Under the pieces are notes generated by a model. The model was not told where the DNA came from and made no database searches. It worked only from the letters and a program-made list of their open reading frames with translations. The translations under genes and the position numbers were made by a program. From positions 56,792,001-56,856,000 of the forward strand of contig OZ296651.1 in NCBI GenBank assembly GCA_965655095.1: DNA of 64,000 nt. Reading direction: 5' to 3'. The DNA comes from Haplodiscus bocki. Its lineage: Eukaryota. Shown here in pieces: positions 32,176-61,007 of the stretch (position 1 is the stretch's first letter; every line of letters begins with the position of its first letter).

Positions 32176-32550
32176 TAGAGCATGGACCAATTAATCGCTT
32201 AGCCGGTTTAAAAACTTCAACTGGTTGATGACAAGAATTTGAGCTCTCGGGGATTCGAACTCATGCACTCTGTTGACCAAAAAATACGAGAAAATTTCCC
32301 TGGCTTCAGAACACTTGCAAGAAAAGATCTACGAATTCCAATCGCAAAAGCTAATTCTGAGAGCAGCTTTGGTCATACGGCAACATAAAACCTGCGACGT
32401 GAACTTTGTTAATCTTTGATAATGAAGATGATAATTTTCGGTATAAAATTTCATGACAACACGGTATTTTTCCAATATTGAAGATTCATTCGGTTAACTG
32501 TAAAACTGACGGATTAACCGGTCAATGATTTTTAATTTGTCCATGCTCTA
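32176..32550. mobile_element. hAT-type MITE
   Basis: TIRs TAGAGCATGGACCAATT / AATTTGTCCATGCTCTA. The 8-bp flanks GACGTGGG / TACGAGGG match at 6/8, consistent with a TSD. Confidence 0.8.
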
Positions 32551-32799
32551 TACGAGGGACTTCATTTTAGAATATTTTGAAGAGTGAATTTCAATTGAAA
32601 ACCCGATCAAAAAATATAATCTACGAAAACGCAGAAAGAGAACGTTCATTACAACCAGCTGAAAAAAGCAATTATTCCAAAATCAATTGAATAAGTCCCA
32701 TTCACCTCTAACCATAAAAATCTATGTTTGTTAGAAATTACAACTTCTTTCTCGAATCTACAGAGTTAGCAGAAACAAAATTTGACATGCGCTTAAATG

Positions 32800-35157
32800 T
32801 TAATAGAAATCTGCGTTCTCTTTAAGTAGTTTGGCATCAATAAAACCGGGTCTTGAGTCATCGACTCCCCTGAATCCATCGTCAATGCCCGGCATCGCGT
32901 TTTTCTTAATACCAGTATTCTTTTTCTTCTTTTTGTTTTCTGCATGCCTGTACACTATTACTCGACTACTGGTTTTTCCTGACCGAGTGGCAGTAGCTTC
33001 ATCAACCAGGGGCAGAGCAGACTCTCTCCGCATGGCGCCGCTTATTGGCAAGGGGGGCAGTTGGAAAAAGGAATTATTGCTGACAACTGGAGGGTCAATC
33101 GAATCGTCATTTGAAGCTGGTCTGTCTACGGATGGACTTCCCGCTGAGGTGTCTCCATCGGGAGTGTAGCCCTGGTTCACCTGGAAGTTGTCATTAGGCT
33201 AAAACAGTTCGGCACAACTATTTGTCTTCGGAAAAGATATTCAAAGGATCCAGACAAGATTACCTCATAGATGCTGTTTCTATCACTTTCTCAAATTATC
33301 ACAAACCGACTTTGAACACTTTGTTACAAAAATATGACTCCTTCTGAAAATGAAGTTGCTTCTCAAGTTACAATGCAAATGTTGGTCAACTGCACAATAT
33401 TTCAATGTACTTACATTATTTTCAGCATCATCTTGCTTGCCATCGTTTTCGAGATCCTCGATGCTAACAACCCCAGCTTCAACTTCATTGCCGTTATTCT
33501 CTTCATCAATGGAAAACACCAAACTCTGTTTAGCAGAGTTCTCTCTGCTTTTAGACAGCATATCACCCACACTCCCACGAGCCGAGTTCTCTCTACTGTT
33601 CAAACCACTTCGTGGGGTTTCATCCTTATCATCTTCAAGTCGTGAAGAGTTTTTGACAGGAGACTCTATTCCACTTTTGGCCACGGAGTGTGTGGGGGTT
33701 TTTCTGGGTGAATGTGTAGCTAATACGACACCATTCACCGATTTCATTCCGCTAGGCGTGCGTGTGAAATACACTCTAAACAACAAAAGCGAGGGTCAGA
33801 CTACGCAGTATCTTAATCTGCTTCCTTTTCATGCTCTTTGTGGCAATCAATCACATTCATTTTCTTCTAGACCACTATTAGCCCATAAAAGCAATATACG
33901 ATGATTTTAGTAGCTCATTTTACTAGAAAGAGACAAGGTTTCACTTCAACAGTTTTTATTGAAAAGTATGTTTAGCTGTGGATACGATTTCTTGATTGGC
34001 ATAATCAAATTGTGCATATCGAATTCCCATGCGATCTCTAAAACCCGAACTTCGAGCCAGCTTGGTAAAATTTATTGGTGAAAAGGCAATAAAATATTCA
34101 AGCATGTTGAAATGCATCATTCAATATAAAACAAGAAAAGCAACTATTCCGCTCGCTCAAGTTTTGCAGTGCCCACAGCAACAAGCATGGTTGAGCTGCA
34201 TTTCAAAAAACTGCTGTTGAATCTGTTTCAGAGACATGCTTCAGGGAACACGTTATTGCAGAAACTGAGGCATGGTATTAATCAGCTGCCTGATTACCAC
34301 TTAGAATGCTCCAAGAGAACTTACCTGTCAGCTTCAGTACTGGAGTCCTCATCCGGGCCCAGTAACGTGCCAGTTCCGGTCCTAATGGGCGGTGGCAGTA
34401 CCACCTCAGACGCATTAGAATCTTCACGAGTAGCTCTCACTTCTGCAAAGTTGAGTGTGGTTTCCGACTCAACAGGTAGAGCCTCGCGCGGTTTATTGTT
34501 ATCCTCACCGGCACTCTTTACTCGTGATGCTTCCGTTCCTCTGAAACGCCATTGATCATACGCATACTCAAAAGCATTCACAGCTCGGTAACATGTATAG
34601 AAACAATTTAGCTTGACAATCATTACGTTTCCAGCACGCAGCATCAATAAAATTTTGGAGACGGGACTGCAAAATTGAATTTTTCTTCAACTTTAAAAAG
34701 TTTTCGCAAAAAATCCTTCCACTATTAGCACGTTAGACTTATAGCAAACCACACGTTCAATTAGATAACAAGAATTTTACCCTTCTTCGATTATCACGGA
34801 AAACAGATAACATTGATTCAAATTCGACAAGGAGTTGAGGGAGAGAAAGAACTCTGAGTTAGTATTGCTGTTCAATATTATGCAAGAACTAAAAATTAAA
34901 CACCCTTTTAATAGTTAATTTGGCACACTCAACCCCAAACAAACTTTGTTGCGCCCTTCCATGCTTCTTTAGTGGTATAATGGGTACTCATATCTTGCAA
35001 GGATTCGCAGCTTGCGCTGGTTGCGAAAATGTTGGTAGATCCCCGACTTCCCAGGTATACTATTTTGTTCCACACAAAGTTGCCAGGTGTAGATTTCGGA
35101 CGATGTGCTCGCGTAACTCTCATTCCTTCAATGTTACTTATAGCAATTTTGGGGCGG
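32800..35157 (-). CDS. Ser/Glu/Pro-rich disordered coding exons, most likely the long C-terminal cytoplasmic tail of the prominin gene (alternatively a separate gene starting at ATG 35318)
   Basis: Exons 35157-34945, 34540-34325, 33775-33415 and 33198-32800 have open frames and phase-consistent GT-AG junctions. The protein ends LLKENADFY*. The first acceptor (gcttttttccag) is phase 2, like the upstream prominin exons. Confidence 0.7.
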
Positions 35158-37869
35158 CTGGAAAAAAGCTTGAAGGAGCTACTTAGTACGTCACCAGGCT
35201 AAGGTGAAATGGAGGTACGGCCAATGAAGATCGGAATGATGGGATCATCGCTTACTTCCTCCGCGCTACGCAGAGAAGACACAGTTCCTCTAGAAAAGTT
35301 GGCACGATCCCAATTCATCCGTCAATTGTATTTGATCAGATATTGGAAAAATATACAAGAATTCTCCCCATTTCTTTCATGATATCATGAGTTGAGTTGT
35401 ATTTCACAACAGCAATCTAAACGTTTCAGAAATGTTGTATATTTTTATTGCACAGTTTACAGGAAAAATATGGGTTCCACCCAATTAAAGAAAAGGCACC
35501 CAGCTACCACCAGGATGTTTTCCGTTCCAATTTTGGTGAAAATGCCTTTTAGTTGAAACTTTATTAGAAGAAAAATTACCTTATACGAATTGTACGTTTA
35601 CCTCACATTTTTAAAAAATCTTCCAAAATTCGGTCGAAAAAAAGCTTCTCGAGGAATGTTACCGTTTTATACGCATTCTAAACCATATTTGCCAACTTTT
35701 AATGAATTTGAAAACAAACAATTTTTGCTACCTTTTGGCGGTAAAAAAAATTTCGTCAGAAATTGTACGACCTTCGTTTTTCATGTTTTCGTTCAATTGG
35801 CAAGTAAACGTGAAAACGCGCGAGATGAATGCATTTCTTAACTTCCACGTAATAAATACGGTGGAGAATAATAAAGTTAGAAAATCAACATTTCACCGAA
35901 ATATTGCTTCTCGAATGCTTCCCAATACTTAAACACAAGCTAAACGGAACATCACCACAAATTATCACTAGTCAGTTGAGATCACGGGATGAATAGTACA
36001 CATGGAAGATCCTAAAAGACATTTGAAACCAAGATCCGAGTGTAAATTTTAGAAAAAATGCACCAATTTTCAATAAAAAAGTTTGTGCCAAAAAGTCGAA
36101 TTGAGATCAGCACCCGCCACAGTGTTTTATACATCAATACTTGATCTGTCAATCAATTATTAGATTACGTCATCTTACCGCCCTATGCTAGCGCATTTTA
36201 AAAGCAAAAAAAAACAAGTACCGCATGTTCGTTAATTTTGAGGGGACACAGTTTTGCAAAATCAAAAACAACTGATCTGACTTTTGAACAAAAACGATTG
36301 CAATCTTGCAGAGAAACCGAAGTAACGTTTGCCTTTACTGTAATCAAAATCTAATATTCCAAATACAGTCTAAACTGACGTTCTTTCAAGAAACTTTTGC
36401 AGCGTACAATACCTGCCACACTATCTCGTATTCAGAAAAAAAAGACATCTTGGGCTGAGAGACCGTCGGAAATGAATTGGGATAATCATTTACAAGACTT
36501 CTGCATACAGGGTGCATGTAGCGATTACAAAATCACTCCCCCAAAAACATCGATCTCAATGTGAAATTCATGAAAAAAGATCATGTACCTTGAAATTGAC
36601 TAGGCTTTCGCACGGAAAGAACGGATTACAATTGAGAATTTAATCCTACTGAAACTTCTACCACCAAATCAACTCCTTCGCTCTCGCCCTTCAACCCCTG
36701 TATCCACGTGGGAAAAATTTCCATAATTTCAAAATTTTCATAATTTTCTGCGTTCCTACAACGTGGCAAGGCCAAAGCCCTTACAAAGATACACCACCGC
36801 ACATGAATTGGTAAATTATCACCACTTTGTGCTCCCCCCACTCTCAATATTTAGCCTATCCTCGACAACCTCGAAACTCGAAGTGGATATCTCAGATCAT
36901 AAAAAGTTTCCATAGGCTGAGAACAGCGTGATCCTTGTCCGGATACAACCACGCATTAGAATTGAAAACAAATCTTAACTTTAACTTCGTCACCTACTCC
37001 GATTACTTCGCACAACGTCCCAAACCACCGCACCCCGAGTTCAAAAAAACTCAAAACTTCGAAACCTTTTCCATTCGCTCTGTTCCCACAGCTGAGAAAA
37101 ACGACACCTTTTCCTGAATACTACCCCAGAAAAGATCTGAGAACAATCAAGTACTTCAAAATCCCTGGCGCCTACCACTACTGTCCATAACAACCCCAAG
37201 ACGTGTATCCAAGTCGGATTAATGACAAAATGTTCACGTTTTCTGCATACCGTTCGTTCCGCAGCTAGAAAAACTCCACGTCTGTGGCCGGTTATTAACC
37301 CAATTTAGAAATTCAAACTCAAAGGACTTCCATTCGTGTTTCTCGGAGCAGCTTTCCTCTTTTTCCCAATCTCTTATACCAAAAGGTAGAAAATTCCTAA
37401 CGTTTACAAGATTATTGTTATTCCGTCTATTCCATCTGCCTGGGAATTACCACACCTTAGCCCGGACATGAAACCAGTAGAATTGATAAAAAATTTTCCA
37501 ACTCAAGATTGCCCGCCACTTGAGCAACTAGGTTCATCTCTACGACGCGTTAAAATTGCAAAAAAACTTCCTTATTTCACTTCCGGCAAATTCCACTCAG
37601 AGCATCCACCCTATCCCATGTAGCTTCGAATATTTGGATTTTAAAGATTTCAAATTCTCGGTTCCCATTGCTTCGATAAAGCCTCACAATTACCTCGGAA
37701 GGGAATTGAAAACTTTTAAACACCTCAACTTCCTCTGTCCTTCTCACTACTTTCCCCATCACTCCTAATCCATGTACTCACAAACGAAAAACTTAATGTT
37801 TTCGAGATTAAGTCAGTCGCTGTGTTCCCGCTGTCTGGGAATGGACACGCCCTTGACCAGACATAAAAC

Positions 37870-38200
37870 CTTATCAAAACGTAATTTTCACCAATGGAAC
37901 ATGCCAGGCATTCTCAACACTAGGTAATACTTCTACCGGCCGCAGTACATAATTTGTATGTATTTCATGTTCACAAATTTTTACAACTCCATGCATGTTC
38001 ACCACCTGGTCTCAGCGACACAATTGATGTCATTTCAACTCGTATTAGAATCGCCATTTTTTCACCAATTCAAGTTTGCTAGAGCATCACACTACAAGGC
38101 ACTCCCTCTGAAACCACAGTAAAAGCTTGCAAACTATTTCATATTCAAGAACGTTTCTTATTCCAAGTATTCTCACTGTATGGAATGGCCGCACATTTAC
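37870..38200 (-). mobile_element. Non-LTR retrotransposon AP-endonuclease relic
   Basis: NDINCVAETRW followed by IMYCGR matches the DIIxLQETRW...IxYSG endonuclease motifs. Confidence 0.5.
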
Positions 38201-40756
38201 TCAGAAATTACCCAACAATTGGATTTCAAAAAAACCCGACTTTAAGCTCGCGACCAATTCCCAGCCTTTTGACTATCCTCTTTAACCCCCTATGTCCAAG
38301 TTGAAATGATCTCAAAATTTTCAAGAACTTTTGATACCCTCTGTTCGTGTAACTTAGGAAAAATTACCCGTGCGCTAGGATACTAATCCGCAAGAGACTC
38401 GAAAAAATTCAAATTCACAAGCCGATATAAAGCACGTTAATTAGAAATACCTACAAACAAGTTATGATCATTAATTTGCCCGATCTCACCGACTCAATGT
38501 TGGACCAACGGACCCCCTTAGTCTTGGTATGATTTCTGGTAAAATGGCGAAGATGTTGAAACATTGTAAAGGGTTATCTTAGTATATGTATTCACCGGGG
38601 AACAGAAAATTTCAACGAGACTTTGTTGATTTGAACGACTTTAACTTCGTCAAGATATTCCCTCCTGCAATTCTCCGCAGCTTTGCTGATTACTGAAAGA
38701 AACACTGAAAATCTACCAACAAGTTGCATGACATTGCTTATCCAACCAGGAGGGCAAAGTCGCAAAATTTTGTACGAAAAAGCGGTTAACAAAGCATAGC
38801 TGACCAAGGCGGATAAGACGTAGGAAAGAATTTTGGACAATTATTTCAGGGATTCCGACGTTAGGGGGTTGTTTACCGTGAGAGCCTTGTATTCGCAAAA
38901 AAGTACCTTCAAAATGTCACCACTTGCGAGTGGCCACGCCCTTGTTTAGACAGTACATGGGATTAGTTTTGAAATGTTCACCTCTTTGAAAATTGGCATC
39001 AAGTCCGACTGCGATTCTTCTTCCCTAAGCATTGTGCCCGAAATGGAAAAGATTCAATCTTTCTGAGAAACTATACACTTTCATACACTTCCACAGTGAT
39101 AATGGCCACATCCCTGCTCGATTAACAGCCCGAATCAAATTAAAGAAGTCATTCTCCAAGCCAATTAGTCCAGTCACTTCCACAACCTGGTGCTTCCTTA
39201 TCTCATGTACCGAAGCTGAAATTGTCTGTATTTTTTCCAGATTTTTGGGATTCCACTCGTTTCCAAATATTGGGAACAGCAATACCTTTCCCAGATATTA
39301 CAAAAAAAAAACGGATAGGAATTGAAACCACTCCATCCTAAGACCTCCCCGGAAACTCACACTAATGAGCAAAGCCCCCTATTCCACGTACCCAAAAAAG
39401 AACGATTTCCTATATTCTGACAATTTTTCTCAGTCGCACTGCTTTGGAACAGCAATGCTCTTGCCCGCATACCACCCCAGATTACAGTCTTGAAATAATC
39501 TGCATAGTAACTGCGCAGGCTACTCCCACTACTCAGCATAACTTCTCTGACCTTTGTTCCTAACTTGGATTAGTGCCTATGTAATAAAATTGTTTAATAC
39601 CCTTTTGTCACATTGCCTAGCAATAGAAACAGCTGTGCCCAGATAAAAGTCCTGGTTAAAACGAAAAACCATCATCCACTTCAATTTCACCGGCCAACCT
39701 CATTACGTAACCAATCTTCCCTACTCATTTACCCAAGTTGTAACAATGCCAACGTTCTCAAGACTTTTCACTCCTTCCGATGCCACACGTTGGAGTTTTT
39801 TCATGTTCACATTATTTTCTAACTCATCATGGAAATGGGCAGATCATACGCCCGAACCGCACCGCACAAAAAAAATTGAAAACTATTCCCCACTTCTTCA
39901 CCAGCCACTCCCACTACCTAGCATATCCTAATGAAGCCTTGTACCCAAAATTGAATGAACTCAATTTTTTTCAATTCGTCCGTTCGCACACCGCTTTACC
40001 CGGAGACTATAGAGTTACAACTCAAAAATACCGGTCACTTCAACTTTCCCCTGCCCTTGTAACTACTTTTTCTAAACCCCTAACCCATTTACCGAAAGTG
40101 GAACCTCTTTTTTCAGGGATATTGTCAAATAGTCCATTCCCTCTGCCTGTGATAGGCCACATCGTCTTCCGAATGCTACACCGGTTTAGAATTGTAAACT
40201 ATTCTCCACTTTAAGGTCGCTGGCATTTTCCAGTACTCAACATATTCATCCTCTCTAACCCCCGTACCAACCCCCCCCCCCCCCAGATTAGAATTGAAGT
40301 ATTGAGACTTTTTAACCACTTCAACTTCCGCGGTCATTCTCACTACTGTTCTTCAGTAAAGCCACCTTCAGAGGGATAAATAGACATTTTTTAATTTCCA
40401 CACTCTCGCAGTTTCTATGCTTTTCTATATGGTCTCGCATTAACACTTATTTCGTTTTCCCACAAATCGGATAAATGAACTCAAAGAATCACAGGGCTCA
40501 CAAGTTTATCAATATCTCAATTTAGAAAAAAAAAGAATTCCGAAGTTTGTTCAAATGCACTCTCTCATCGCTACTATAATGGTCCGTCCTATACACCCAC
40601 GTAGTGTTACTGCGTTTTGAAAAATCAAAAACCAAAAAGCGTGACAAAAATGCTAACGTACACACCGGGCAAAGTCACAAAAGGCACGAAAAAACATTAA
40701 AAATTTCCGAAGTTCTATAAAAAAACACTATAAAGGCCGCGGGTTGACAACTTGAC

Positions 40757-41090
40757 ACGCAGAGGCGAAGCGGAATTTCTCAACACATTCTGATTTGTCA
40801 GTTGAGATCAAGCTTCCCAAATGACATTTGAAACCATGATCGGAGACGTGATGGACACTTTCAGAAATACCACCTCAACTGTCAATCAAATGTTTGTTCG
40901 TTCGAAGAAAAACAGAAAAATTGAAACAAGTACCTATCACAGGGTGTCATACTGGAAAATTTGATGTGTCAATCATGTTTTCTCAGGTTACGCCATTTTG
41001 CTGCCGAATCTTCAAGAAGTTTGGACATTTAGAAAATGAAAAGGTAGCTGCCAAAAAAGAAGCCATTTTTGATCACTTGCACCAGATGAC
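40757..41090 (-). mobile_element. Helentron-type element subfamily B, ending at the hAT insertion
   Basis: GCAGAGGCGAAGCGGAATTTCTCAACACATTCTGATTTGTCAG, homologous to the copies at 5684 and 50902. Confidence 0.55.
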
Positions 41091-41096
41091 CACTAT

Positions 41097-42078
41097 CTGA
41101 TGACATCAAAAAATAAATTATTTTTATTGTTGAAACGAAACAATAAATTATTGTGATTAATCCACAATTATTGTGAAAAAAAAACAATTATTGTTGATCT
41201 TCGGAAATTTTTTCAGTCGCCTGTTTTACCACTTGTGCGTCCCATAGCTTCTTTTTCGCTTTCAGGAACAAGATTGCCTCCAAATTGACAGGTGTCATTT
41301 TTTTGCGGTTATCGGAAAGACAGCGAAGAAGTGCGTTGAAGTTGAACTATCTGTCCATCCGTCGAAAATTAAGCCAAACTTAATAGGAAGTTGCTTTTCG
41401 ATAATCATCTCAACTTCTTTCGTAACTCCTTGTAAGTACTTCATAAATGTAGATCTAGAGAGAACTCCCAACTTTGAAAACTTTCGGGTCAAGTCGTTTT
41501 CGACGAAAGTAAACGGTAAGTCCGCCATAATAACCCATTCTAGATAACCATAAATCGTTTCCGTTTTTTATCAAGTACAAAAGAACCCAATGAACTAAAA
41601 TTGGAAGTCATATCTGCAACGTAATCTTTGTGATCAGAAAATACGTGACTGATCAAATTCTGAAAACCCGCACCTTTCGCTTGCTTGCGCAATTTGCCGC
41701 ATCGGCACTTAAACGATCCATCAGCTTGTGTTTCGAAGTAAAATTCAACAATTTGTTTGTTAGTGAAAGGCATACTCTTTCTCAAGTGCACTGTAATGTG
41801 AACGCACGCAGACTGACTCGTGGCAATTAGGCGGATTAAATAACTTACATGTAAACAAAAGAATTTTAACCGCAAACACGCAGCCGCAGCTCTCCCGGTT
41901 ACATGTAATACGTAGACCCTGCAAGTAGTGTTGCAGCGCAAGCGTGTTGAAATTCCCCGAAAAAAAATAATTGTCACCAAAACAATAAATTATTTGTATT
42001 GTTTTTCACTGTAAATAAATTATTTTATTTTATTTATTGACAATAATTTATAAATAAATTATTTTTTACGCACCCCTG
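41097..42078 (-). mobile_element. Internally deleted hAT transposon with BED-finger transposase remnant (41773 to about 41190)
   Basis: MPFTNKQIVEFYF...CRCGKLRKQAKGAGFQNLISHVFSDH, then a 1-nt frameshift in an A-run at about 41565, then IYGYLEWVIMADLPFTFVEN...FGLIFDGWT, fused to the C-terminal DNRKKMTPVNLEAILFLKAKKKLWD. TIR CAGGGGTGCG ends at 42078 and the left TIR is decayed. Subterminal ACAATAAATTATTGT repeats occur at both ends. Flanks ACCACTAT / ACCACGTT match at 6/8. Confidence 0.9.
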
Positions 42079-42317
42079 ACCACGTTTCCCCTGTGATACG
42101 AGTACCCACTTCCGTTTCAATGGACTCAGAGCTAAAGCAAGCAGCCATGAAGCAAACATGAAGGATGCAAATGCTTTCAGTGCACTCAATTTTACAGTAT
42201 TGGACTAATTTCTCAAAAGGCAATTGAATTTAAACACATTAACACACTAATGAAACCCAAATCAAACGAGTTTGCACTCAAAACAAACTACACCACAGAA
42301 AACTGGTTTGGACTTAC

Positions 42318-42341
42318 GTTGGACTGATGCGATTATTGCCA
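42318..42341 (-). CDS. 24-nt microexon (R)GNNRISP(T), putative prominin tail
   Basis: tttatag|TGGCAATAATCGCATCAGTCCAAC|gtaagt. It has a consensus donor and is phase 2-2, matching the donor at 42522 and the acceptors at 35157 and 34540. Confidence 0.65.
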
Positions 42342-42517
42342 CTATAAAGCCAAACATTTTCTGTCAAGTTACAAGTAGAAACGAATTATTTTTAGCCTTA
42401 GTTTGCTCGTTTGTGCTTTGGTAACAATGGAAATCAATTGAAAATGCATGAAGACGTTAGTTGAAAGAGAGCCATCCAAAGCACAGAACTTCTCGAATCA
42501 AAAGACTAATTAATTAT

Positions 42518-45500
42518 TTACCGCCCAGAAGGAGGGCCACTTGCAGGAGGAGCAGCCAAGAGTGTAATGATTTTCCTGAAACAGAAATTTTGTACATAAT
42601 TATGACAAGAGCTATAGTTTTATAGAAAAAGAACTAAATTTCTAACTTTTCATTTTCAGATTTCGGTTGAGGGTTTGGTCCCCGAAACAAGTAGAAAACG
42701 AGCAAAAATGTTGAGATAGAGGCACCCATAGTGAATATTGAGATAAAAAGTCCCATAAACCACATTTGGCTCTAAAATAGAGTACGAGCGTGAGAGCGGC
42801 TGAATATATCATACGTTTTGGTCGTAATATACATATCAAGTCAAGCAAGAACGTTATAAAAATCGGTAACTTCGGGTCAACAGAAACCCCTATGTGAAAT
42901 CATAACTTTAGAAAAATTAATTATGAGGAATTAGTACGTTTTCTACTGATCGCCTTTGGAGCTTGAACAGAAAAATTTTTCCACAATTGTTTGGATGATC
43001 GCTGCCTAAAAGTTGAATTATGTGATATACTGCTTTTCTGAAATTAATTTTAATTTTATTGCATTAAGCAATGTTTTTAATCAACGCTTTCAATAAAATT
43101 GCCCGACTATTACAAGCTCTTTCCACGTATAAAACTACATAGTTTTAGAAGTGTTTTACAACCAGATTTTCAGGCACCCATTAGTTTAGGACCAGGCCGG
43201 GGACAAAACTATTCTGGTGAGAAAAATTTTCGGAAACTCTTGTGCCAAAACTGCTTGAACCCTAATAACATTTTTAGGCAGTAAATATTGAAACAAAGGG
43301 TCCCTCAGCTAAACTTTCGGCGCTTTGCGACAATTTTTTTTCTAGAAAAAGACGAGATTTATAAAAGTTTTTTTGTCGGAAAAGCCATAACTTTTTGAAG
43401 ACAAGGATCCACGAAGATAACTTGGGCCAAACGGGCATCACCACTTGGACCATTCCCAGCTAGTTCATTCTAATTTTCTAACCCAAGGCTCCACAACAGC
43501 ATCGCATGTGTATTCCCAAAACCAATCATACGCATCCGCCAACACTTTGCAGTTCCCCGCATCCCTTTCCAGTCGATCATACGCCCAGTTTATATAATTG
43601 CGTAAATACTTATCAGTATTGGCTCCAGTAGACTCCACACTCTATAACCAAAACAACATTCAAAGGACATTGTCAAAACATGATAAGTTTCAAATTCAGA
43701 TTTGGGACACAAACTGTTTCAAGCATGGGAGTGGCTTCATTTGCGATCCAGTTTTGAAGAGATATTTCAGCAGGATTAAATACGTTGTCAATTACACTTC
43801 TAAAATTTGTGAGCGCAGTGCCCAATGTTGTTCTGTGCAACAGAAACGCTTCTTGGGTTTGTTTTACGCTCGGTAAAAGAGTGTCAAGAGCATCTTTTAT
43901 CTCATTGGCAGCATTTTGCGCTCGGATTCTCTAAAAGATTGAACAATTCAACAGAAGATTTCAAGTTTATCCGACAAACCAATCACTTTCGTTATTCCTT
44001 ATGTTTTATTATTGATTCAGAATGGAAAAAAACATACGCATCAAGAATGATGGGCATTGAGCGCTAAGATTTTATAATAGTAAACAAACCGAGGCGTGTA
44101 CTTGAAATCAAAAAGTACATAACGAAGAGCGGCATCCGTGCTAGCTTGGGAAAGCGAGAGTAAAAAAACGGATAAAAGTAAATAAGAACTGTGTTCTACT
44201 ATAGCGCTCAGACTCGCTAAGTCCGCCAATCACGCGAGCGTTTACGAAGAAAAAAGTTATTCCTTATGTTTTATTATTGATTCAGAATGGAAAAAAACAT
44301 ACGCATCAAGAATGATGGGCATTGAGCGCTAACAATTTATAATAGTAAACAAACCGAGGCGTGTACTTGAAATCAAAAAGTACATAACGAAGAGCGGCAT
44401 CCGTGCTAGCTTGGGAAAGCGAGAGTAAAAAAACGGATAAAAGTAAATAAGAACTGTGTTCTACTATAGCGCTCAGACTCGCTAAGTCCGCCAATCACGC
44501 GAGCGTTTACAAAGAAAAAAGTTATTCCTTATGTTTTATTATTGATTCAGAATGGAAAAAAACATACGCATCAAGAATGATGGGCATTGAGCGCTAAAAA
44601 TTTATAATAGTAAACAAACCGAGGCGTGTACTTGAAATCAAAAAGTACATAACGAAGAGCGGCATCCGTGCTAGCTTGGGAAAGCGAGAGTAAAAAAACG
44701 GATAAAAGTAAATAAGAACTGTGTTCTACTATAGCGCTCAGACTCGCTAAGTCCGCCAATCACGAGAGCGTTTACGAAGAAAAAAGGTAAACTGTACAGG
44801 CATTAGGACAAGTTTAACGCCTAAAAACTATTTGATGTTTTTTTTCGACGTCAGGGATTTTTTTGTCATTCCGACTTCAAAATTTTGCAGATTTCATTCT
44901 TTTTTAAAATCGAATGTTTCCATTCTGTTCATTTCGAATTTTTATGAAGTCCAATTTGGTTAACATCGCTTCCGTGTTTTTGAAGACTATTTTCAGACTG
45001 ACATCTGCACTGGGTGCGATTCCCGCGGAAATCGAGGTGTCTAGTTGGGATTTAGTTGCGTTCAGATCATCACAACTAGCTGCACAGAGGGTAGTGAATC
45101 CCGGAGTGCCATATATCACCTGCGTGTACCACTGAAGCACCTAAACAAGAGAAGTAAACTTGAACGCTACTAAACAAAAACCTGGAAAAAATTGAAGAAC
45201 AAAAAGTAAAACGAAGAACTCTGTCAAATCTGGAAAATGGGAAAGAGGCAATCCTTTAGCTTAAACATACTTTTGAAACAAATTATGCCAAATTTTCCAT
45301 CAATGAATACAAACAACTCAAACTTGCTGCAAAAAGGATTCATTTGGAATAGGTTTCAAGTACGGATTTAGATTGATTCTGAATATCAAAAGAAATACGA
45401 ATACATCTGTTTAGACAAACAATTTAGGGAATCTTTTTTAACGCCTGAAAAAATTGATCTACAGCGTTTTCGATTTCCCCTCGACAATGATCTACATGAC

Positions 45501-48500
45501 GACAACCGTAAAAAATATCATTTCTCATCACAGATTTTATTCGGATTCGTCTGAGAGTAGTTCAGTAAAATCTTTTTAGCATGTTTTGTCAACAATAAAA
45601 GAACAACTAACGTCATCAGCGTGGTTAGTCATGGTTAAGAGGGTGGTGTCGTGTTGGGTGGGATCGAAGTTGCTGAGATTGGCTTTGAGATCATCTGCGA
45701 GCAGCACAACGTTACTCACATCGGGTGTAGCTGAGCTCCAAATTGAGTCAGCTCCTGGAAGAAGAGCATTCACATTGAGAGTGCCACTGGTATTGAACCT
45801 ATTTGACTCTTCCAGTCGCAATACCTCATACGCTGTTTTGTCTTCTTTACAGTTCCTGCACAGAAATATTATTATTATCTCAAATCATGAAAAATAGTTT
45901 CCTCAAAATAATACCCAACAATACAAAGCACTCAAAAGAAAAAGTTTTTTCTTGAAAAATATTTGGAAGCGTGGATTAACCACAATTCAATCGGAAATGG
46001 AGGGATTACCGCTTAATATGATGAACATCCCGTTTAATATTACTATTCTCACTCTGCATCTCATTTCGTTTTTGATCTAACTCATTGTCTAAAACTGATA
46101 ACTTACGTGTATACTATCCTTTCATGAAATAATATAACACTTTGGTTTTTCATTCTTAAAAAAGAAATATGGTTTTTATTAGCTTGCAAAAGAAGAACAA
46201 TTGAGACTTCAAACAAGTCAGCATTGAGACAGATCTTTGCTTTGCATACACTTGCCATGAAGGTGAAGAACGACGAGTAATAGCCTACACCTAAGGAGAT
46301 TCTTGTTGACGCGAACTTTACAAAAAACATCTTTCCAGAAATTGAAAGGCAATATCCAGCAGCTCAAAAACAATCCCAACTATCAGGAATCAAATAGAAC
46401 GTACGATTACCAATCCAGCCGGTAGTCTCCGAGAAAACATTGAAAAAAAAACGCAATGGAAAAACATCCGAAATTCGAACTAAAAGTCAAGATATCTCGC
46501 GGAAAGTATAGAAAGGCTACCCTTAGTATACCGCAGATTCTCAATACTGTGCTCTTTTGAATGAACACTATATTCCTGCAACCAAATCGCTTGTCTTTCA
46601 GAGAATCATCTTGGAACTACGAGCTGACAAAAAAAAACAATGTAAAAAGCATGAAATGGGAACAGGATATGTCTGATTTTTCGCAGATTCATATATTTCG
46701 GGCTATTTGAACGACCACTGGGTGGCCCCAATTGAAGCGGTAATCCACCAGACGAACAATTTTGAGAAAAGACGTAAGAGAAAAAATTCTTACTACAAAT
46801 CAACCTTTTCGTTTCGACTCCACATATCCCTCACAATGCTGGCTCTATAAAGAGCCCTCAACGTCTGCAAGTCAACAGTATTCTCCTGATAAAGACGACT
46901 TTTGAGAAACACGCCCGCAAAAATTTTCCAAATTCAAACCAAGAAGTCTCTCACCACACTTTCGTGGAAAAAAATCATTTTTGAAGTTTAGGTACACAAT
47001 AATTTTCCAAGCAACCTCGACGGCAAATGTAAGCAAAATAACCGTACTTCCAATCGAATGAAGCAAAAAAAAACTATTGGAACGTTAGAGCATGAACGAA
47101 AAGTCATAAATCTATTATATTTTGGATCGACGGAAACTTCAAGAGCACACTTTTTACTGGAATGTTTCGTCTCCAAATAGAGAAAAACGCTGCATTTTCA
47201 ACCTAAACCGATTCTCGGTGAAGACAAGACTTAACACGCCGAGAACAGCTAAAACTCGGTGCGGCTAACCAGAGGAGACAAAAATTTTAATTACTCGTAG
47301 GGGGTAAAGTTTTCTGCCATTTTTTTGGCATTATATTACCAAAAAGGTCGTACGGGTACCATTATCTGCTTAGAATTTGCCTCCTGAAAAATTTCCGTGA
47401 AATGATGGGGAACATCTTGACTTAAGTCAAGAAAATTACTCTCACGATACCGAAAAAAGTCGTCCTTCATTGTTTTGTGGAATTGTCCGTTCCCAGCAGA
47501 GCGATGTTTCACTCCATCTTCAAGAGTTACCCGACAAAGATGATGAATTGCCGCCAAATGAAAGGCAAGCATTTCTTGCTCCAAACTAAGCGAAAAATTC
47601 GTGCGATTCGACAGCTGTTAACGGTTGATACAAAAGTACCACTGTATCCGTGTTCCTGAGCTGGCAACCCGAAGAGAGCTACAATTCATGCTCCATTTGG
47701 ACCAGGGATGTCCAAGTTGATAACTTTCTGAAAAAAATATCTATTAATTTCCTGAAATGTTCAGGGTTCATCATCAGTTATATTCAACGCAAACAAAGAA
47801 TTTGCACATCCCCGACCTTGAGAAAACCCCCACTATCTGCGACCAGTGGAATGATTCGAGGAGGATTGTCATCCACTTAATGGTATTGAGGACAAACTTT
47901 CCATAAGATAATTCTCAAAAACAAAAAAACTTCAACGTTTACATCGGAATACACTGAATGAAAACATCAAAACTGCAGATCCTTGGATAGTGTTGTATAA
48001 TGTGGCTGGTTAGTTTGAAATGTTTTTGGAAAACAAGCTTTTGCTGGAAAATATCCAGGTTTCGAATTTGCAACAAAACTATTTTACGAAAATTTCCAAA
48101 AAAAGAAATCGCTGCCTTCCATCACTTTTATCAAAGCTACGAAAACGTGAAGAATTAAAATGAAACAATAGTATTCAACAAAATCAATATTGAAAACATT
48201 TTTTTAGAAAAATTAACTTCGAAGTTTATATTTAAAACATTTTCTGAGTTGCAACCGAATTTTTCCCCAATAATGTATGAGTACGGAGATCCCTGGCTTG
48301 GAGTAATTTTTCGCAACAACGAGAACATGAATTAAAAACGGAAGATTGCAAATAAAAAAAAATATTTTCCAAGACGGTCATTACCAAAGACGGCACTCAA
48401 ACTTTTGAAGAATATCTAAATTTCGAAGTTACAGAAATATTCTCTGGATAGTGAATGAAAACTGGAGATTCAGGAATTCGAGTAATTTTTCCGAACCGGA

Positions 48501-50270
48501 AGTAATTGAATTAAAAAGGGATCATGGCAAGGGGTTGAAGGCTATCAACAGTTAATGAAAATATCCGGTCTGGAAAACAATCTCTTATCATCCATTTCAG
48601 CGGTCCCATTTTTTAAATTTCGTCTTGGTATCAACAAAATACGGCAAAAAGGAAAAATTTATAAATTTAGAGCAGTTTCCACGACTTCTCTACTTAAAGC
48701 GAAGCAACGCAATAGCAAGGAAGTTTCTATTCAATCATTTTATTACACAGGCAAAGCTATGCTTTGCAACACTTGCGCCAACGGAATACTATCGAACAGA
48801 TCGACTAAATAAAACAAATTTTTGACGGGGGCATGATACTACGAATACTACTGATAACAAGTGCACAGAGACTCAGTTAATTCTAAATTTATGTACAAGT
48901 AAGAAATGGTATTTCTTTCGCTAGGTATTTTAACTAAAATACTTATTTTTAAGCGTCAATGTCACAGTCAGTAGAGTCAAAGTTCCCAGGTTCGAGCCCA
49001 GGCCACTCCTCTCTCTTTGTGGTCAAAATCTAGGAAATTGTACGATTTGTTAACGGATCGGAAAACAAGAATCAGAAGCCTCTGTCTGATATAGCACTTG
49101 CTATAGCGGAAGCGTAATTATTATTATGATTGATTTAACCACAGTATCTTGTATTGTACAGCAGATGTACTGCAAGCTTTCAGCTCAGCAATAAAACCAA
49201 AGTCAGCTTCTATCATAAACTGAGGGCTTTTCTTGATTCACCGTGGTTAATGCATCTGAAGATTTATTAGTAAGTATACTTCGGTTTATGATAATTGTAG
49301 AGAGACTCTAGGCATTGGGGTGATGCAACTAACTGCAGAAGAATCGTGAAGGTGATGTTTACAGTATCATCGTCCAAAACCAAGTCTGCAATGTAATATT
49401 CACTGCCGTTGTGCATAACATTCGGTTCATCCAAAAAGTAGATCTCACCATCTCTCATTGATGAACAAATTTTCACAACGGGCGAAGCTTCCCAAAAAGT
49501 GTAGATCGTGTAGGCCATGAAAAGCGTTGAAATTAAAGCCATGATCAAACTGAACCTGAAACATTATTTTTGGATTCGGTTAAAACTGAAACTATCATCC
49601 TATAACTGTCAGCTATCATCTTATAACTGTCAGCTATCATCTTATAACTATCAGCAGAAACAATCAATGATATACTCCAAATTTGATTTAACAGATAGCT
49701 TTAGGAAAGCGACTCAAGTAAAATGTTCAAAACAGCCCAAATTTAGTTTAAATTAATATAGAGAGAAGATACTGCTAACCCGAGAATCACGAAACCACAG
49801 CAGTGGTTCAATTTGGTCCTTTCAGCTGGCATTCGATCTTTGCTCCAAAAAATGAAGGCAACAATAATCAAAACCCCTCCAGCGATGGAGAAAATAATAC
49901 CGAACATCGTGCCCACACTTCTGTATGCAGTGCTGAAAAGATATTCTAACTTACACAGGGTCAATATTGTCAAAAGAAAGCGTCGGCTTATAACTAACAA
50001 GGAATCGATGTAATCTTGGCCTTCGGACACCAGTATGTCTGAGTTCTGCCACAAATAGTTTTCCAAGTTGAAAGGAGCGAATGAATCGTTGACACTGGTG
50101 GACATTAACTCAAACAACTCATCCGTAGCATCTGAAGCCTCCATAGACAAATTCGTCATCTCTGAATAACAAACACTTTTCAAATGCATTGTTTCTATGA
50201 AATTCTATGAGGCTCAAAATTGGAACCGTTGAACTTTCGGTAGTTCATCAATAAAATTCTCGTATAATTG
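42518..50270 (-). CDS. PROM1: Prominin-like (CD133 family) membrane glycoprotein, 5'-partial: end of first large loop, TM3, TM4, second large loop, TM5
   Basis: Exons (minus): 50270-50227 (tentative), 50161-49999, 49932-49780, 49555-49334, 45855-45612, 45140-45003, 43930-43715, 43641-43483, 42771-42647, 42575-42522 (read-through stop at 42520-42518). All are phase-consistent. Motifs align by eye with prominin: WSKDRMPAERTKLNHCCGFVILG, KICSSMRDGEIYFLDEP...EYYIADL...ITFTILLQNCKEDKTAYEVLRLEESNRFNTSGTLN, and YINWAYDRLERDAGNCKVLADAYDWFWEYTCDAVVEPWSQMWFMG. The family call is confident; exact orthology is not established. Confidence 0.9.
43991..44786. repeat. Near-perfect 265-bp tandem triplication in a prominin intron
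   Basis: Units start at 43991, 44256 and 44521 with only a few substitutions. Confidence 0.97.
48745..49118 (-). mobile_element. Helentron-type non-autonomous element, subfamily A
   Basis: GCAAAGCTATGCTTTGC hairpin plus AACACTTGCG, internal GGTTCGAGCCC B-box, and far end GCACTTGCTATAGCGGAAGCGT. Confidence 0.7.
49592..49654. repeat. 21-bp minisatellite x3
   Basis: (CTATCATCTTATAACTGTCAG)n. Confidence 0.9.
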
Positions 50271-60879: not shown

Positions 60880-61007
60880 NNNNNNNNNNNNNNNNNNNNN
60901 NNNNNNNNNNNNNNNNNNNNNNNNNNNNNNNNNNNNNNNNNNNNNNNNNNNNNNNNNNNNNNNNNNNNNNNNNNNNNNNNNNNNNNNNNNNNNNNNNNNN
61001 NNNNNNN
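60880..61007. other. Assembly gap (N run)
   Basis: 128 N bases. Confidence 1.

What the first reader, a model, noticed from the sequence alone, without database searches (positions are those of the whole stretch)
32800..42771. Prominin with a ~430-residue disordered cytoplasmic tail
Seen: after TM5 (exon 42771-42647), an unbroken phase-consistent chain of exons (54, 24, 213, 216, 361, 399 nt) continues the frame across a ~7-kb TE-filled intron to a stop at 32800. Known: vertebrate prominin C-tails are only tens of residues long. Inference: this prominin has a tail several-fold longer. It is Ser/Pro/acidic-rich, with repeated SRENSA motifs, SP/TP sites, an NQGY motif and a KKKKK cluster, and could act as a signalling or ciliary scaffold. 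Gene predictors could easily split it into two genes.
Basis: partly seen in the sequence, partly recalled or inferred. Interest (0 to 1): 0.72.

Follow-up and report, generated by a model that had tools for sequence, protein, structure and literature searches.

The report
Prominin gene with long conserved tail
The exons downstream of this prominin gene are real, conserved coding sequence that most likely give the membrane protein an unusually long (about 500-residue) flexible cytoplasmic tail, but the copy in this window is broken by a transposon and a stop codon, and no RNA data could be obtained to prove the link.

Summary
The tail exons are real. They are conserved in sequence, exon order and splice phase in two other animals (rel-1 and rel-2). 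In rel-2 the prominin penultimate and TM5 exons lie directly upstream on the same strand.

The chain is wrong in detail:
- A conserved exon ("X", from 42131) was missed.
- The "213-nt exon" is the 3' part of a conserved 345-nt exon (35289-34945).
- The 54- and 24-nt exons have no support beyond splice consensus.

The window haplotype is damaged. A multi-copy transposon replaces the 3' part of exon X from 42078. The 345-nt exon carries an in-frame TAG (35201-35199). All six amino-acid differences in the tail that could be polarised are derived on this haplotype. The other haplotype (L008) is intact and encodes a tail of about 494-520 residues.

The tail has no Pfam match and gives low-confidence, structure-free models. 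It contains about eight conserved short blocks. The KKKK cluster is conserved; SRENSA and NQGY are not.

I rate it a new variant of a known family, of moderate interest.

The parts
43465..43638 (-). Penultimate prominin exon. These are open-frame bounds; the exact splice sites were not determined.
   Evidence: Pfam PF05478 Prominin, profile 726-770/799, E 1.6e-5. The same hit occurs in the other haplotype. The rel-2 orthologous exon is 46% identical, E 5e-19. It is colinear with a second weak PF05478 hit (profile 539-605) at window 45654-45860.
42647..42771 (-). TM5 exon, 125 nt. Its donor leaves 2 nt of a codon. Read-through of the donor would end the protein after four more residues, at the stop at 42634.
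   Evidence: AG/GT sites and frame. Strongest hydrophobic 19-mer, KD 2.09. Homologous to rel-2 L011:5985-6139, E 4.7e-8, with the same acceptor position and the same donor context ENE + 2 nt | GTTAG. Two synonymous and no non-synonymous differences between haplotypes.
42522..42575 (-). It is a prediction only and may be optional or spurious.
   Evidence: Canonical AG/GT sites and an open, symmetric phase. No homolog in rel-2. Three differences in 54 nt between haplotypes, two of them non-synonymous.
42318..42341 (-). It is a prediction only and may be optional or spurious.
   Evidence: Canonical AG / GTAAGT sites and symmetric phase. No cross-species support. Two differences in 24 nt between haplotypes.
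42079..42131 (-). The exon is 126 nt in the intact haplotype (L008:1515-1640). Here it is cut off after the Trp codon.
   Evidence: The acceptor is in the same phase as in rel-2. Matches rel-1 L004:3-139 (E 0.034 against the whole window) and rel-2 L011:11385-11531 (E 0.007). rel-1 against rel-2 gives E 4.9e-7. The intact continuation and donor are seen only in L008.
41115..42078 (-). Haplotype-specific transposon fragment with hAT/BED-like ORFs. It replaces 410 bp of the other haplotype, including 73 nt of exon X and its donor. It supplies a stop (42063-42061) and AATAAA signals (42038-42029).
   Evidence: Absent from L008. More than 25 copies at about 97-98% identity in the genome. The missing part of exon X is found nowhere in the primary assembly. 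Poly(A) signals located.
34945..35289 (-). Conserved 345-nt exon. It carries an in-frame TAG at 35201-35199 in this haplotype.
   Evidence: Homologous over its full length to rel-1 L004:197-598 and rel-2 L011:12395-12799 (46-48% identity, alignment A1; E 1.6e-37 between the two relatives). The codon is TAG here and GAG in L008. The genome search also reports '1 TAG'. The donor GTTTGT and its phase are shared with rel-1.
34325..34540 (-). 216-nt tail exon
   Evidence: Acceptor and donor position and phase are conserved in rel-1 and rel-2. The invariant DEDSSTEADR lies at its 3' end.
33415..33775 (-). 361-nt tail exon
   Evidence: Begins with the conserved VYFTRTP(S/N)GMK in all three species (E 2.6e-9 to rel-2). 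The rest is variable and of low complexity. Single copy in the genome.
32800..33198 (-). Last coding exon, 399 nt, with stop TAA at 32802-32800
   Evidence: 61% identical to rel-1 (P0002, E 3.4e-20). It is also present, split by an extra intron, in rel-2 (P0003). Single copy in the genome. Three synonymous and no non-synonymous differences between haplotypes.

Best explanation
The region is the 3' half of one prominin-family gene on the minus strand. After the fifth transmembrane segment, the cytoplasmic C-terminal domain continues through five conserved coding exons: exon X, a 345-nt exon, and the 216-, 361- and 399-nt exons. The 54- and 24-nt micro-exons may be optional additions. In the intact haplotype this gives a tail of about 494-520 residues.

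The tail is mostly disordered, with about eight short conserved blocks:
- S.ET(E/D).GT..T..TW
- SE.P.IP
- RPxSAPGNFxWNKIVxLGSRGSTNIFAT
- T.KEAW
- DEDSSTEADR-VYFTRTPSGMK
- LPPLP..SGAxRRESxLP.VDEA
- VYRHAENKKKK
- (F/Y)RxVDD(S/T)RPGFID..LL

By inference these blocks act as docking or phosphorylation sites and as a polybasic membrane-binding patch. That would extend the partner-binding role already known for the short prominin-1 C-terminal domain.

The haplotype in this window is a damaged allele of that tail. A transposon has replaced the 3' part of exon X and brings a stop plus poly(A) signals. The next exon has a nonsense codon, and the tail has accumulated derived amino-acid changes. This allele probably makes a short-tailed prominin.

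What is shown: the conservation, exon structure, phases, synteny and lesions. What is inferred: joint transcription with prominin, disorder and function.
For: 1. The tail exons are conserved coding sequence in two other taxa. rel-1 is the GCA_013332895.1 contig L004/L005. rel-2 is ENA ERZ25071359 ctg37155, loci L006, L009-L011, L016 and L017. The tblastn E-values range from 1e-16 to 1e-37, and splice positions and phases are conserved. One conserved block spans the 216/361 junction.

2. All rel-2 exons lie in order on one strand: prominin penultimate exon (Pfam 718-768, E 3e-6; 46% identical to the window exon, E 5e-19), TM5 exon (E 4.7e-8), X, the long exon, 216, 361 and the split last exon. 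They join into one open 1842-nt frame with canonical splice sites.

3. The TM5 donor (ENE + 2 nt | GTTAG) and the exon X acceptor share position and phase in the window and in rel-2.

4. There is no conserved start codon. Conserved coding sequence precedes the first possible start in the rel-2 long exon. The rel-1 frame runs open and ATG-free through exon X to the contig edge.

5. In the window, only 515 nt separate the TM5 donor from the exon X acceptor.

6. In haplotype L008 the whole chain is open: 1650 nt with the two micro-exons and 1572 nt without them.

7. Lesions of the window haplotype: the transposon replacement, TAG versus GAG, and 6 of 6 polarisable tail differences derived on this haplotype against 0 of 2 in the prominin exon.

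8. The tail has no Pfam family. It is 76% disorder-promoting residues with no hydrophobic segment. AlphaFold2 gives pLDDT 47 and 56 with almost no secondary structure.

9. In mammals the prominin-1 C-terminal domain is also built from several small, alternatively spliced exons (PMC10967083).
Against: - There is no transcript evidence.
- No annotated protein anywhere carries this tail. The exhaustive search of 1.84 billion representatives found only three short ORF-type hits.
- Both the window and rel-2 have a stop a few codons after the TM5 donor if that donor is not used, so a short-tail product is possible.
- An in-frame ATG lies 6 codons upstream of the exon X acceptor in the window, and another lies inside exon X in rel-2. 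An internal start cannot be excluded in those two species.
- The prominin identity of the upstream gene rests on two colinear exon-level Pfam hits below the gathering score.
- The structure models rest on three-sequence alignments, which give poor models anyway.
- The relaxed-constraint argument rests on six sites.
Confidence: 0.72

Rival explanations
1. There are two genes. Prominin ends shortly after TM5, either by read-through of the donor or with a small terminal exon. Exons X to 399 belong to a separate, unannotated gene for a disordered protein that happens to lie downstream on the same strand.
For: There is no RNA link. A stop follows the TM5 donor within a few codons in both species. 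In-frame ATGs lie near exon X in the window and in rel-2. The tail matches no prominin profile or any other family.
Against: Adjacency, strand and phase compatibility are conserved between species that are only 39-50% identical, across introns that have been remodelled by transposons. The ATGs are not conserved in position. rel-1 has none in or upstream of exon X within the contig, and the rel-2 long exon has conserved coding sequence ahead of its first possible start. Exon X begins at a conserved acceptor, not at a start. Only 515 nt are available in the window for a 3' end, a promoter and a first exon.
Confidence: 0.18
2. The reader's exact chain is the real mRNA of this haplotype. Exon X is skipped and the AG at 35157 is used as a rescue acceptor, so the damaged allele still makes a tail of about 430 residues.
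For: The path is open and every site is canonical. All these exons have symmetric phase, so skipping keeps the frame.
Against: The AG at 35157 lies within conserved coding sequence (K-L-F-S-S-R-P). It is the first in-phase AG after the TAG, which is what a frame-guided reader would pick. The conserved acceptor at 35290/35289 is intact and would be used, leading into the TAG. Derived amino-acid changes on this haplotype, including one in the invariant SAPGN block, suggest that selection on it has relaxed.
Confidence: 0.1
3. The tail 'exons' are chance open frames in transposon-rich DNA.
For: Short open frames with AG/GT flanks are common. The 54- and 24-nt pieces could well be chance.
Against: Four exons are conserved at the protein level in two other taxa, with E-values down to 1e-37. 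Their introns are at the same positions and phases. They are single copy in the genome.
Confidence: 0.01

Closest known systems
Vertebrate prominin-1 (CD133), C-terminal cytoplasmic domain IC3
   Same: A pentaspan prominin in which the segment after TM5 is cytoplasmic. That segment is encoded by several small exons downstream of the TM5 exon and serves as a binding and phosphorylation platform. In mammals it is alternatively spliced (exons 26-29) into at least 10 C-termini (PMC10967083).
   Different: Whole mammalian proteins are 804-865 aa (PMC10967083), so IC3 is only tens of residues. Here the tail alone is about 494-520 aa and shares no detectable sequence with any Pfam family. The Y828/Y852 context of CD133 was not looked for.
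Drosophila Prominin-like
   Same: An invertebrate prominin homolog with a longer cytoplasmic C-terminal domain than in mammals, residues 875-1014, about 140 aa (PMC6923988).
   Different: The tail here is about 3.5 times longer. It carries its own set of conserved blocks. No similarity to fly proteins appeared in the exhaustive search with the last exon.

Membership tests
Prominin (Pfam PF05478) | Significant sequence match to the family profile | tested here: met
   Exon 43465-43638 matches profile 726-770/799 with E 1.6e-5, and the other haplotype gives 6e-5. A second, weaker, colinear hit (profile 539-605) lies at window 45654-45860. The rel-2 orthologous exon gives E 3e-6.
Prominin (Pfam PF05478) | Whole-protein score above the curated gathering cut-off (34.3 bits) | not testable with these tools
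   Only single exons could be scanned by reference, and the best gave 23.6 bits.
Prominin (Pfam PF05478) | Pentaspan topology with the last transmembrane segment right after the conserved Cys-containing block | tested here: inconclusive
   A 26-residue hydrophobic segment (KD 2.09) in exon 42771-42647 directly follows the exon matching profile 726-770. TM1-4 and the two large loops were not mapped. A protein-language-model look-up of exon 49746-50189 put a prominin cluster first, but at a weak score of 0.85.
Prominin (Pfam PF05478) | Cytoplasmic C-terminal domain encoded by several small exons after the TM5 exon | tested here: met
   A conserved donor lies 12-22 codons after TM5 in the window and in rel-2. 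In-phase downstream exons are conserved in three taxa.
Disordered tail carrying short linear motifs | No stable fold, low hydrophobicity, and conserved short blocks separated by variable linkers | tested here: met
   76% disorder-promoting residues, with a maximum KD19 of 0.73 in the tail. AlphaFold2 gives pLDDT 46.7 and 56.1 with almost no secondary structure, though on shallow alignments. The three-species alignment shows about eight conserved blocks between indel-rich stretches.
Disordered tail carrying short linear motifs | Motifs bind partners or are phosphorylated | not testable with these tools
   Assigning RRES to a basophilic kinase site, LPPLP to a proline-recognition motif and KKKK to lipid binding is inference from the sequence patterns only.

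The most novel reading that the evidence does not exclude
A clade of invertebrates has turned prominin into a membrane-anchored scaffold by adding a conserved module of about 500 residues with its own motif set. This may have happened by capture of a formerly separate downstream gene. The sequenced animal would then be a natural heterozygote: one allele has lost the module through a transposon insertion and is decaying. If so, the tail is dispensable in single dose, and the locus offers a ready-made allelic contrast for testing what prominin's cytoplasmic domain does.
Probability: 0.2. Interest if true: 0.6.

Novelty: new variant of a known kind. Interest (0 to 1): 0.45.

Why it matters
How prominin signals to the cytoplasm is still debated, and the work so far centres on a short, poorly conserved tail in mammals. 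A prominin with a tail of about 500 residues and eight motif blocks conserved across species would offer a much richer set of candidate interaction sites to test. It would also show that the family's C-terminus can expand greatly.

There are practical lessons too. Gene predictors would probably split or truncate this gene. The reference haplotype misrepresents it, because exon X is cut off and the next exon holds a stop, so annotation from the primary assembly alone would be wrong. The case also shows that a frame-guided exon chain can thread around real lesions and still look intact.

Tried and rejected
- **Word-index protein searches.** Searches with the rel-1 long-exon ORF, a prominin exon and the 216-exon ORF found only the query's own species.
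- **Exhaustive representative search.** The search with the last exon gave only three ORF-type hits and no annotated full-length protein.
- **Pfam.** Every tail exon of three species gave nothing credible. Ten further upstream minus-strand ORFs also gave nothing.
- **PDB sequence search.** The prominin exon gave nothing.
- **ESM Atlas.** The long exon gave no usable hit.
- **Paralog comparison.** A prominin-like paralog on C11 shows no similarity to this gene's exons at E<1e-3 by tblastx.
- **Micro-exon homology.** I tested whether the 54- and 24-nt exons are homologous to the 5' extension of the long exon in the relatives. The local alignment score equals the shuffle mean, and the order along the gene is wrong, so I rejected this.
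- **ATG 35318 as an independent start.** It lies upstream of the conserved acceptor 35290/35289 and has no counterpart in rel-1 or rel-2, so I rejected it.
- **A TG|GTCAGG donor in exon X of this haplotype.** The site is created by the transposon junction and is absent from the intact haplotype, so I rejected it.
- **Walking the rel-2 contig.** This was hampered because many ENA gene calls there read through stop codons and cannot be given by reference.
- **Naming the organisms.** A literature search for the accession numbers found no paper.
- **Joined spliced model.** It was not sent to any search or fold tool. Joined translations were made only inside local scripts, to check frames and to align the species.
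Full report
**1. Observation**

They join into one open 1392-nt frame that ends with TAA at 32802-32800. Leaving out the 213-nt piece also keeps the frame. So the description is accurate as a statement about the sequence.

**2. The upstream gene is a prominin**

- The exon at 43465-43638 matches Pfam PF05478 at profile positions 726-770 of 799, with E 1.6e-5.
- A genome-wide scan adds a weaker, colinear hit (positions 539-605) at window 45654-45860.
- The next exon, 42771-42647, carries a 26-residue hydrophobic segment, as expected for TM5.
- A language-model look-up of a further exon put a prominin cluster first, but only weakly.
- The whole protein could not be scored. Searches were done exon by exon, by reference, and the joined model was not sent to any search or fold tool.

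**3. The tail exons are real coding sequence**

- An exhaustive HMMER search with the last exon found three ORF-type proteins: the window's own, one at 61% identity (P0002) and a more distant one (P0003).
- Their contigs come from two other eukaryotes. rel-1 is a 2.3-3.5-kb contig of GCA_013332895.1 and its ENA re-assembly (L005, L004). rel-2 is a 303-kb ENA contig (L006, then L009-L011, L016 and L017, obtained by walking along it).
- rel-1 has short introns. It shows homologs of the 213-, 216-, 361- and 399-nt exons in order, with the same splice positions and phases.
- rel-2 has the same exons spread over 18 kb, with the last exon split by one extra intron.
- Joined locally, the rel-2 exons give one open 1842-nt frame with canonical sites throughout. 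The partial rel-1 set gives an open 1416-nt frame.
- The tail exons are single copy in this 1.5-Gb genome.
- Chance open frames are excluded for these exons.

**4. Revised exon structure**

- *The 213-nt exon is part of a longer exon.* In both relatives the homologous exon extends about 45 codons further 5'. The window has the same sequence directly upstream of 35157, in the same frame, from a good acceptor at 35290/35289. The real exon is therefore 35289-34945 (345 nt), 46-48% identical to the relatives over its whole length.
- *A conserved exon was missed.* The rel-1 frame continues upstream through a 57-nt intron into a further exon. Its counterpart lies in rel-2 between the TM5 exon and the long exon. 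In the window it starts at 42131, only 515 nt downstream of the TM5 donor. I call it exon X.

The 54- and 24-nt exons have no counterpart in rel-2. Between haplotypes they differ at 3/54 and 2/24 nt, while the introns flanking them differ at 2/71 and 4/180. They remain predictions based on splice consensus only.

**5. Link to prominin**

- In rel-2 everything lies on one strand of the contig, at these positions: prominin penultimate exon 75.6 kb (Pfam 718-768, E 3e-6; 46% identical to the window exon, E 5e-19), TM5 exon 89.7 kb (E 4.7e-8), exon X 95.1 kb, long exon 96.1 kb, then 97.6, 99.6, 108.4 and 113.1 kb.
- The TM5 exon has the same acceptor position in both species. The donor context is also the same (ENE, two more nucleotides, then GTTAG), leaving two bases of a codon.
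- Exon X begins at a pyrimidine-rich acceptor with one base completing that codon, in both species. TM5 spliced to X is therefore in frame in both.
- No start codon is conserved:
  - The rel-2 long exon has conserved coding sequence ahead of its first possible start.
  - rel-1 has no ATG in exon X or in the 11 codons upstream, up to the contig edge.
  - The ATGs near exon X in the window and in rel-2 are at different positions.
- With only 515 nt between the TM5 donor and exon X in the window, there is little room for a 3' end, a promoter and a first exon of a second gene.
- This is good indirect evidence for one gene.

**6. The window haplotype is damaged**

- An ENA assembly holds two contigs for this locus. 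L007 is identical to the window over the 10.9 kb compared. L008 is about 96% identical and colinear, so it is most likely the other haplotype.
- In L008 exon X is 126 nt long. Its 3' part is homologous to the relatives and it has its own donor.
- In the window, homology stops after the Trp codon at 42079. There, 964 bp of a multi-copy transposon (more than 25 copies at about 97-98% identity) replace 410 bp. This adds six codons, a stop and AATAAA signals.
- The lost part of exon X exists nowhere in the primary assembly.
- The 345-nt exon has TAG at 35201-35199 where L008 has GAG and the relatives have Thr.
- Six amino-acid differences between the haplotypes in the tail can be polarised with the relatives. 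In the prominin core exon, both polarisable changes are derived on L008.
- This pattern fits relaxed selection on the tail exons of the window haplotype after the reading frame was cut upstream. That in turn fits exon X and the later exons being one translation unit. The sample is small, so I treat this as suggestive.
- In L008 the whole chain is open: 1650 nt with the two micro-exons and 1572 nt without. This gives a tail of 520 or 494 residues after TM5.

**7. Nature of the tail**

- No Pfam family matches any tail exon of any of the three species.
- The tail is 76% disorder-promoting residues, rich in Ser, has net charge -10 and contains no hydrophobic segment.
- AlphaFold2 on the two best-conserved exons gave mean pLDDT 46.7 and 56.1 with almost no secondary structure. 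This is consistent with disorder, but the alignments had only three sequences.
- The three-species alignment shows about eight conserved blocks between variable, indel-rich linkers. They include a 30-residue block around WNKIV.LGSRGSTNIFAT, DEDSSTEADR-VYFTRTPSGMK across an exon junction, LPPLP followed by an RRES site, a polybasic VYRHAENKKKK, and a near-C-terminal VDD(S/T)RPGFID..LL.
- Docking, phosphorylation and lipid binding are inferences from these patterns.

**8. Comparison with what is known**

- Mammalian prominin-1 is 804-865 aa. Its C-terminal domain is built from small, alternatively spliced exons that give at least ten C-termini and bind kinases, phosphatases and adaptors (PMC10967083).
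- Drosophila Prominin-like has a C-terminal domain of about 140 residues (PMC6923988).
- The architecture here is the same kind of thing: TM5 exon, then a multi-exon cytoplasmic domain. It is much longer, and its motif set was found in no annotated protein.

**9. Limits**

- There is no RNA evidence.
- The rel-1 contig stops 11 codons upstream of exon X.
- The joined model was never searched as a whole.
- The 54- and 24-nt exons are unresolved.

**10. Verdict**

This is a real and conserved extension of a prominin gene, and most likely a single gene (about 0.7-0.75). I rate it a new variant of a known family, of moderate interest.

Noticed in passing
window 43991-44786: A tandem array of three copies of a 265-bp unit (98% matches) lies in the intron upstream of the penultimate prominin exon. 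Each copy holds the same 62-aa minus-strand ORF.
   Followed up: partly
window 41115-42078 (also L013, L014): A transposon fragment with BED/hAT-like ORFs has more than 25 copies at about 97-98% identity across the genome, so the family was active recently. Most other copies carry extra sequence between positions 763 and 761 of this copy. No matching terminal inverted repeat was seen at its 3' end here.
   Followed up: partly
G000 C11:42,569,908-42,649,946: A second prominin-like locus has four colinear PF05478 exon hits (profile 90-154, 401-475, 466-527 and 771-799), one of them above the cut-off. It shows no detectable similarity to the window gene's exons, and no copy of the tail was found there.
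   Followed up: partly
L016:5280-12190 / L017:12104-19014 (rel-2): A Pao/BEL-type retrotransposon of about 7 kb sits in the 14-kb intron between the penultimate prominin exon and the TM5 exon of the relative. A reverse-transcriptase-like ORF sits in the extra intron that splits its last tail exon.
   Followed up: no
L009, L010, L016 (ENA ERZ25071359 gene calls): Many genes called on this eukaryotic contig read through standard stop codons, so the public calls seem to use a non-standard code. Those proteins cannot be looked up by reference.
   Followed up: no
window 60880-61007: A run of 128 N, either a gap or masked. It was left untouched.
   Followed up: no
window 43465-43638 versus L008:11-181: The two haplotypes differ at 10 of 174 nt, with 5 amino-acid changes, in a core prominin exon. 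This is as divergent as the neighbouring intron. Heterozygosity falls to 0 of 499 nt in the 3' flank, 32301-32799.
   Followed up: partly
window 42146-42148: An in-frame ATG lies six codons upstream of the exon X acceptor, inside the pyrimidine tract. It is not conserved in position in the relatives, but it would allow an internal start in this species.
   Followed up: partly
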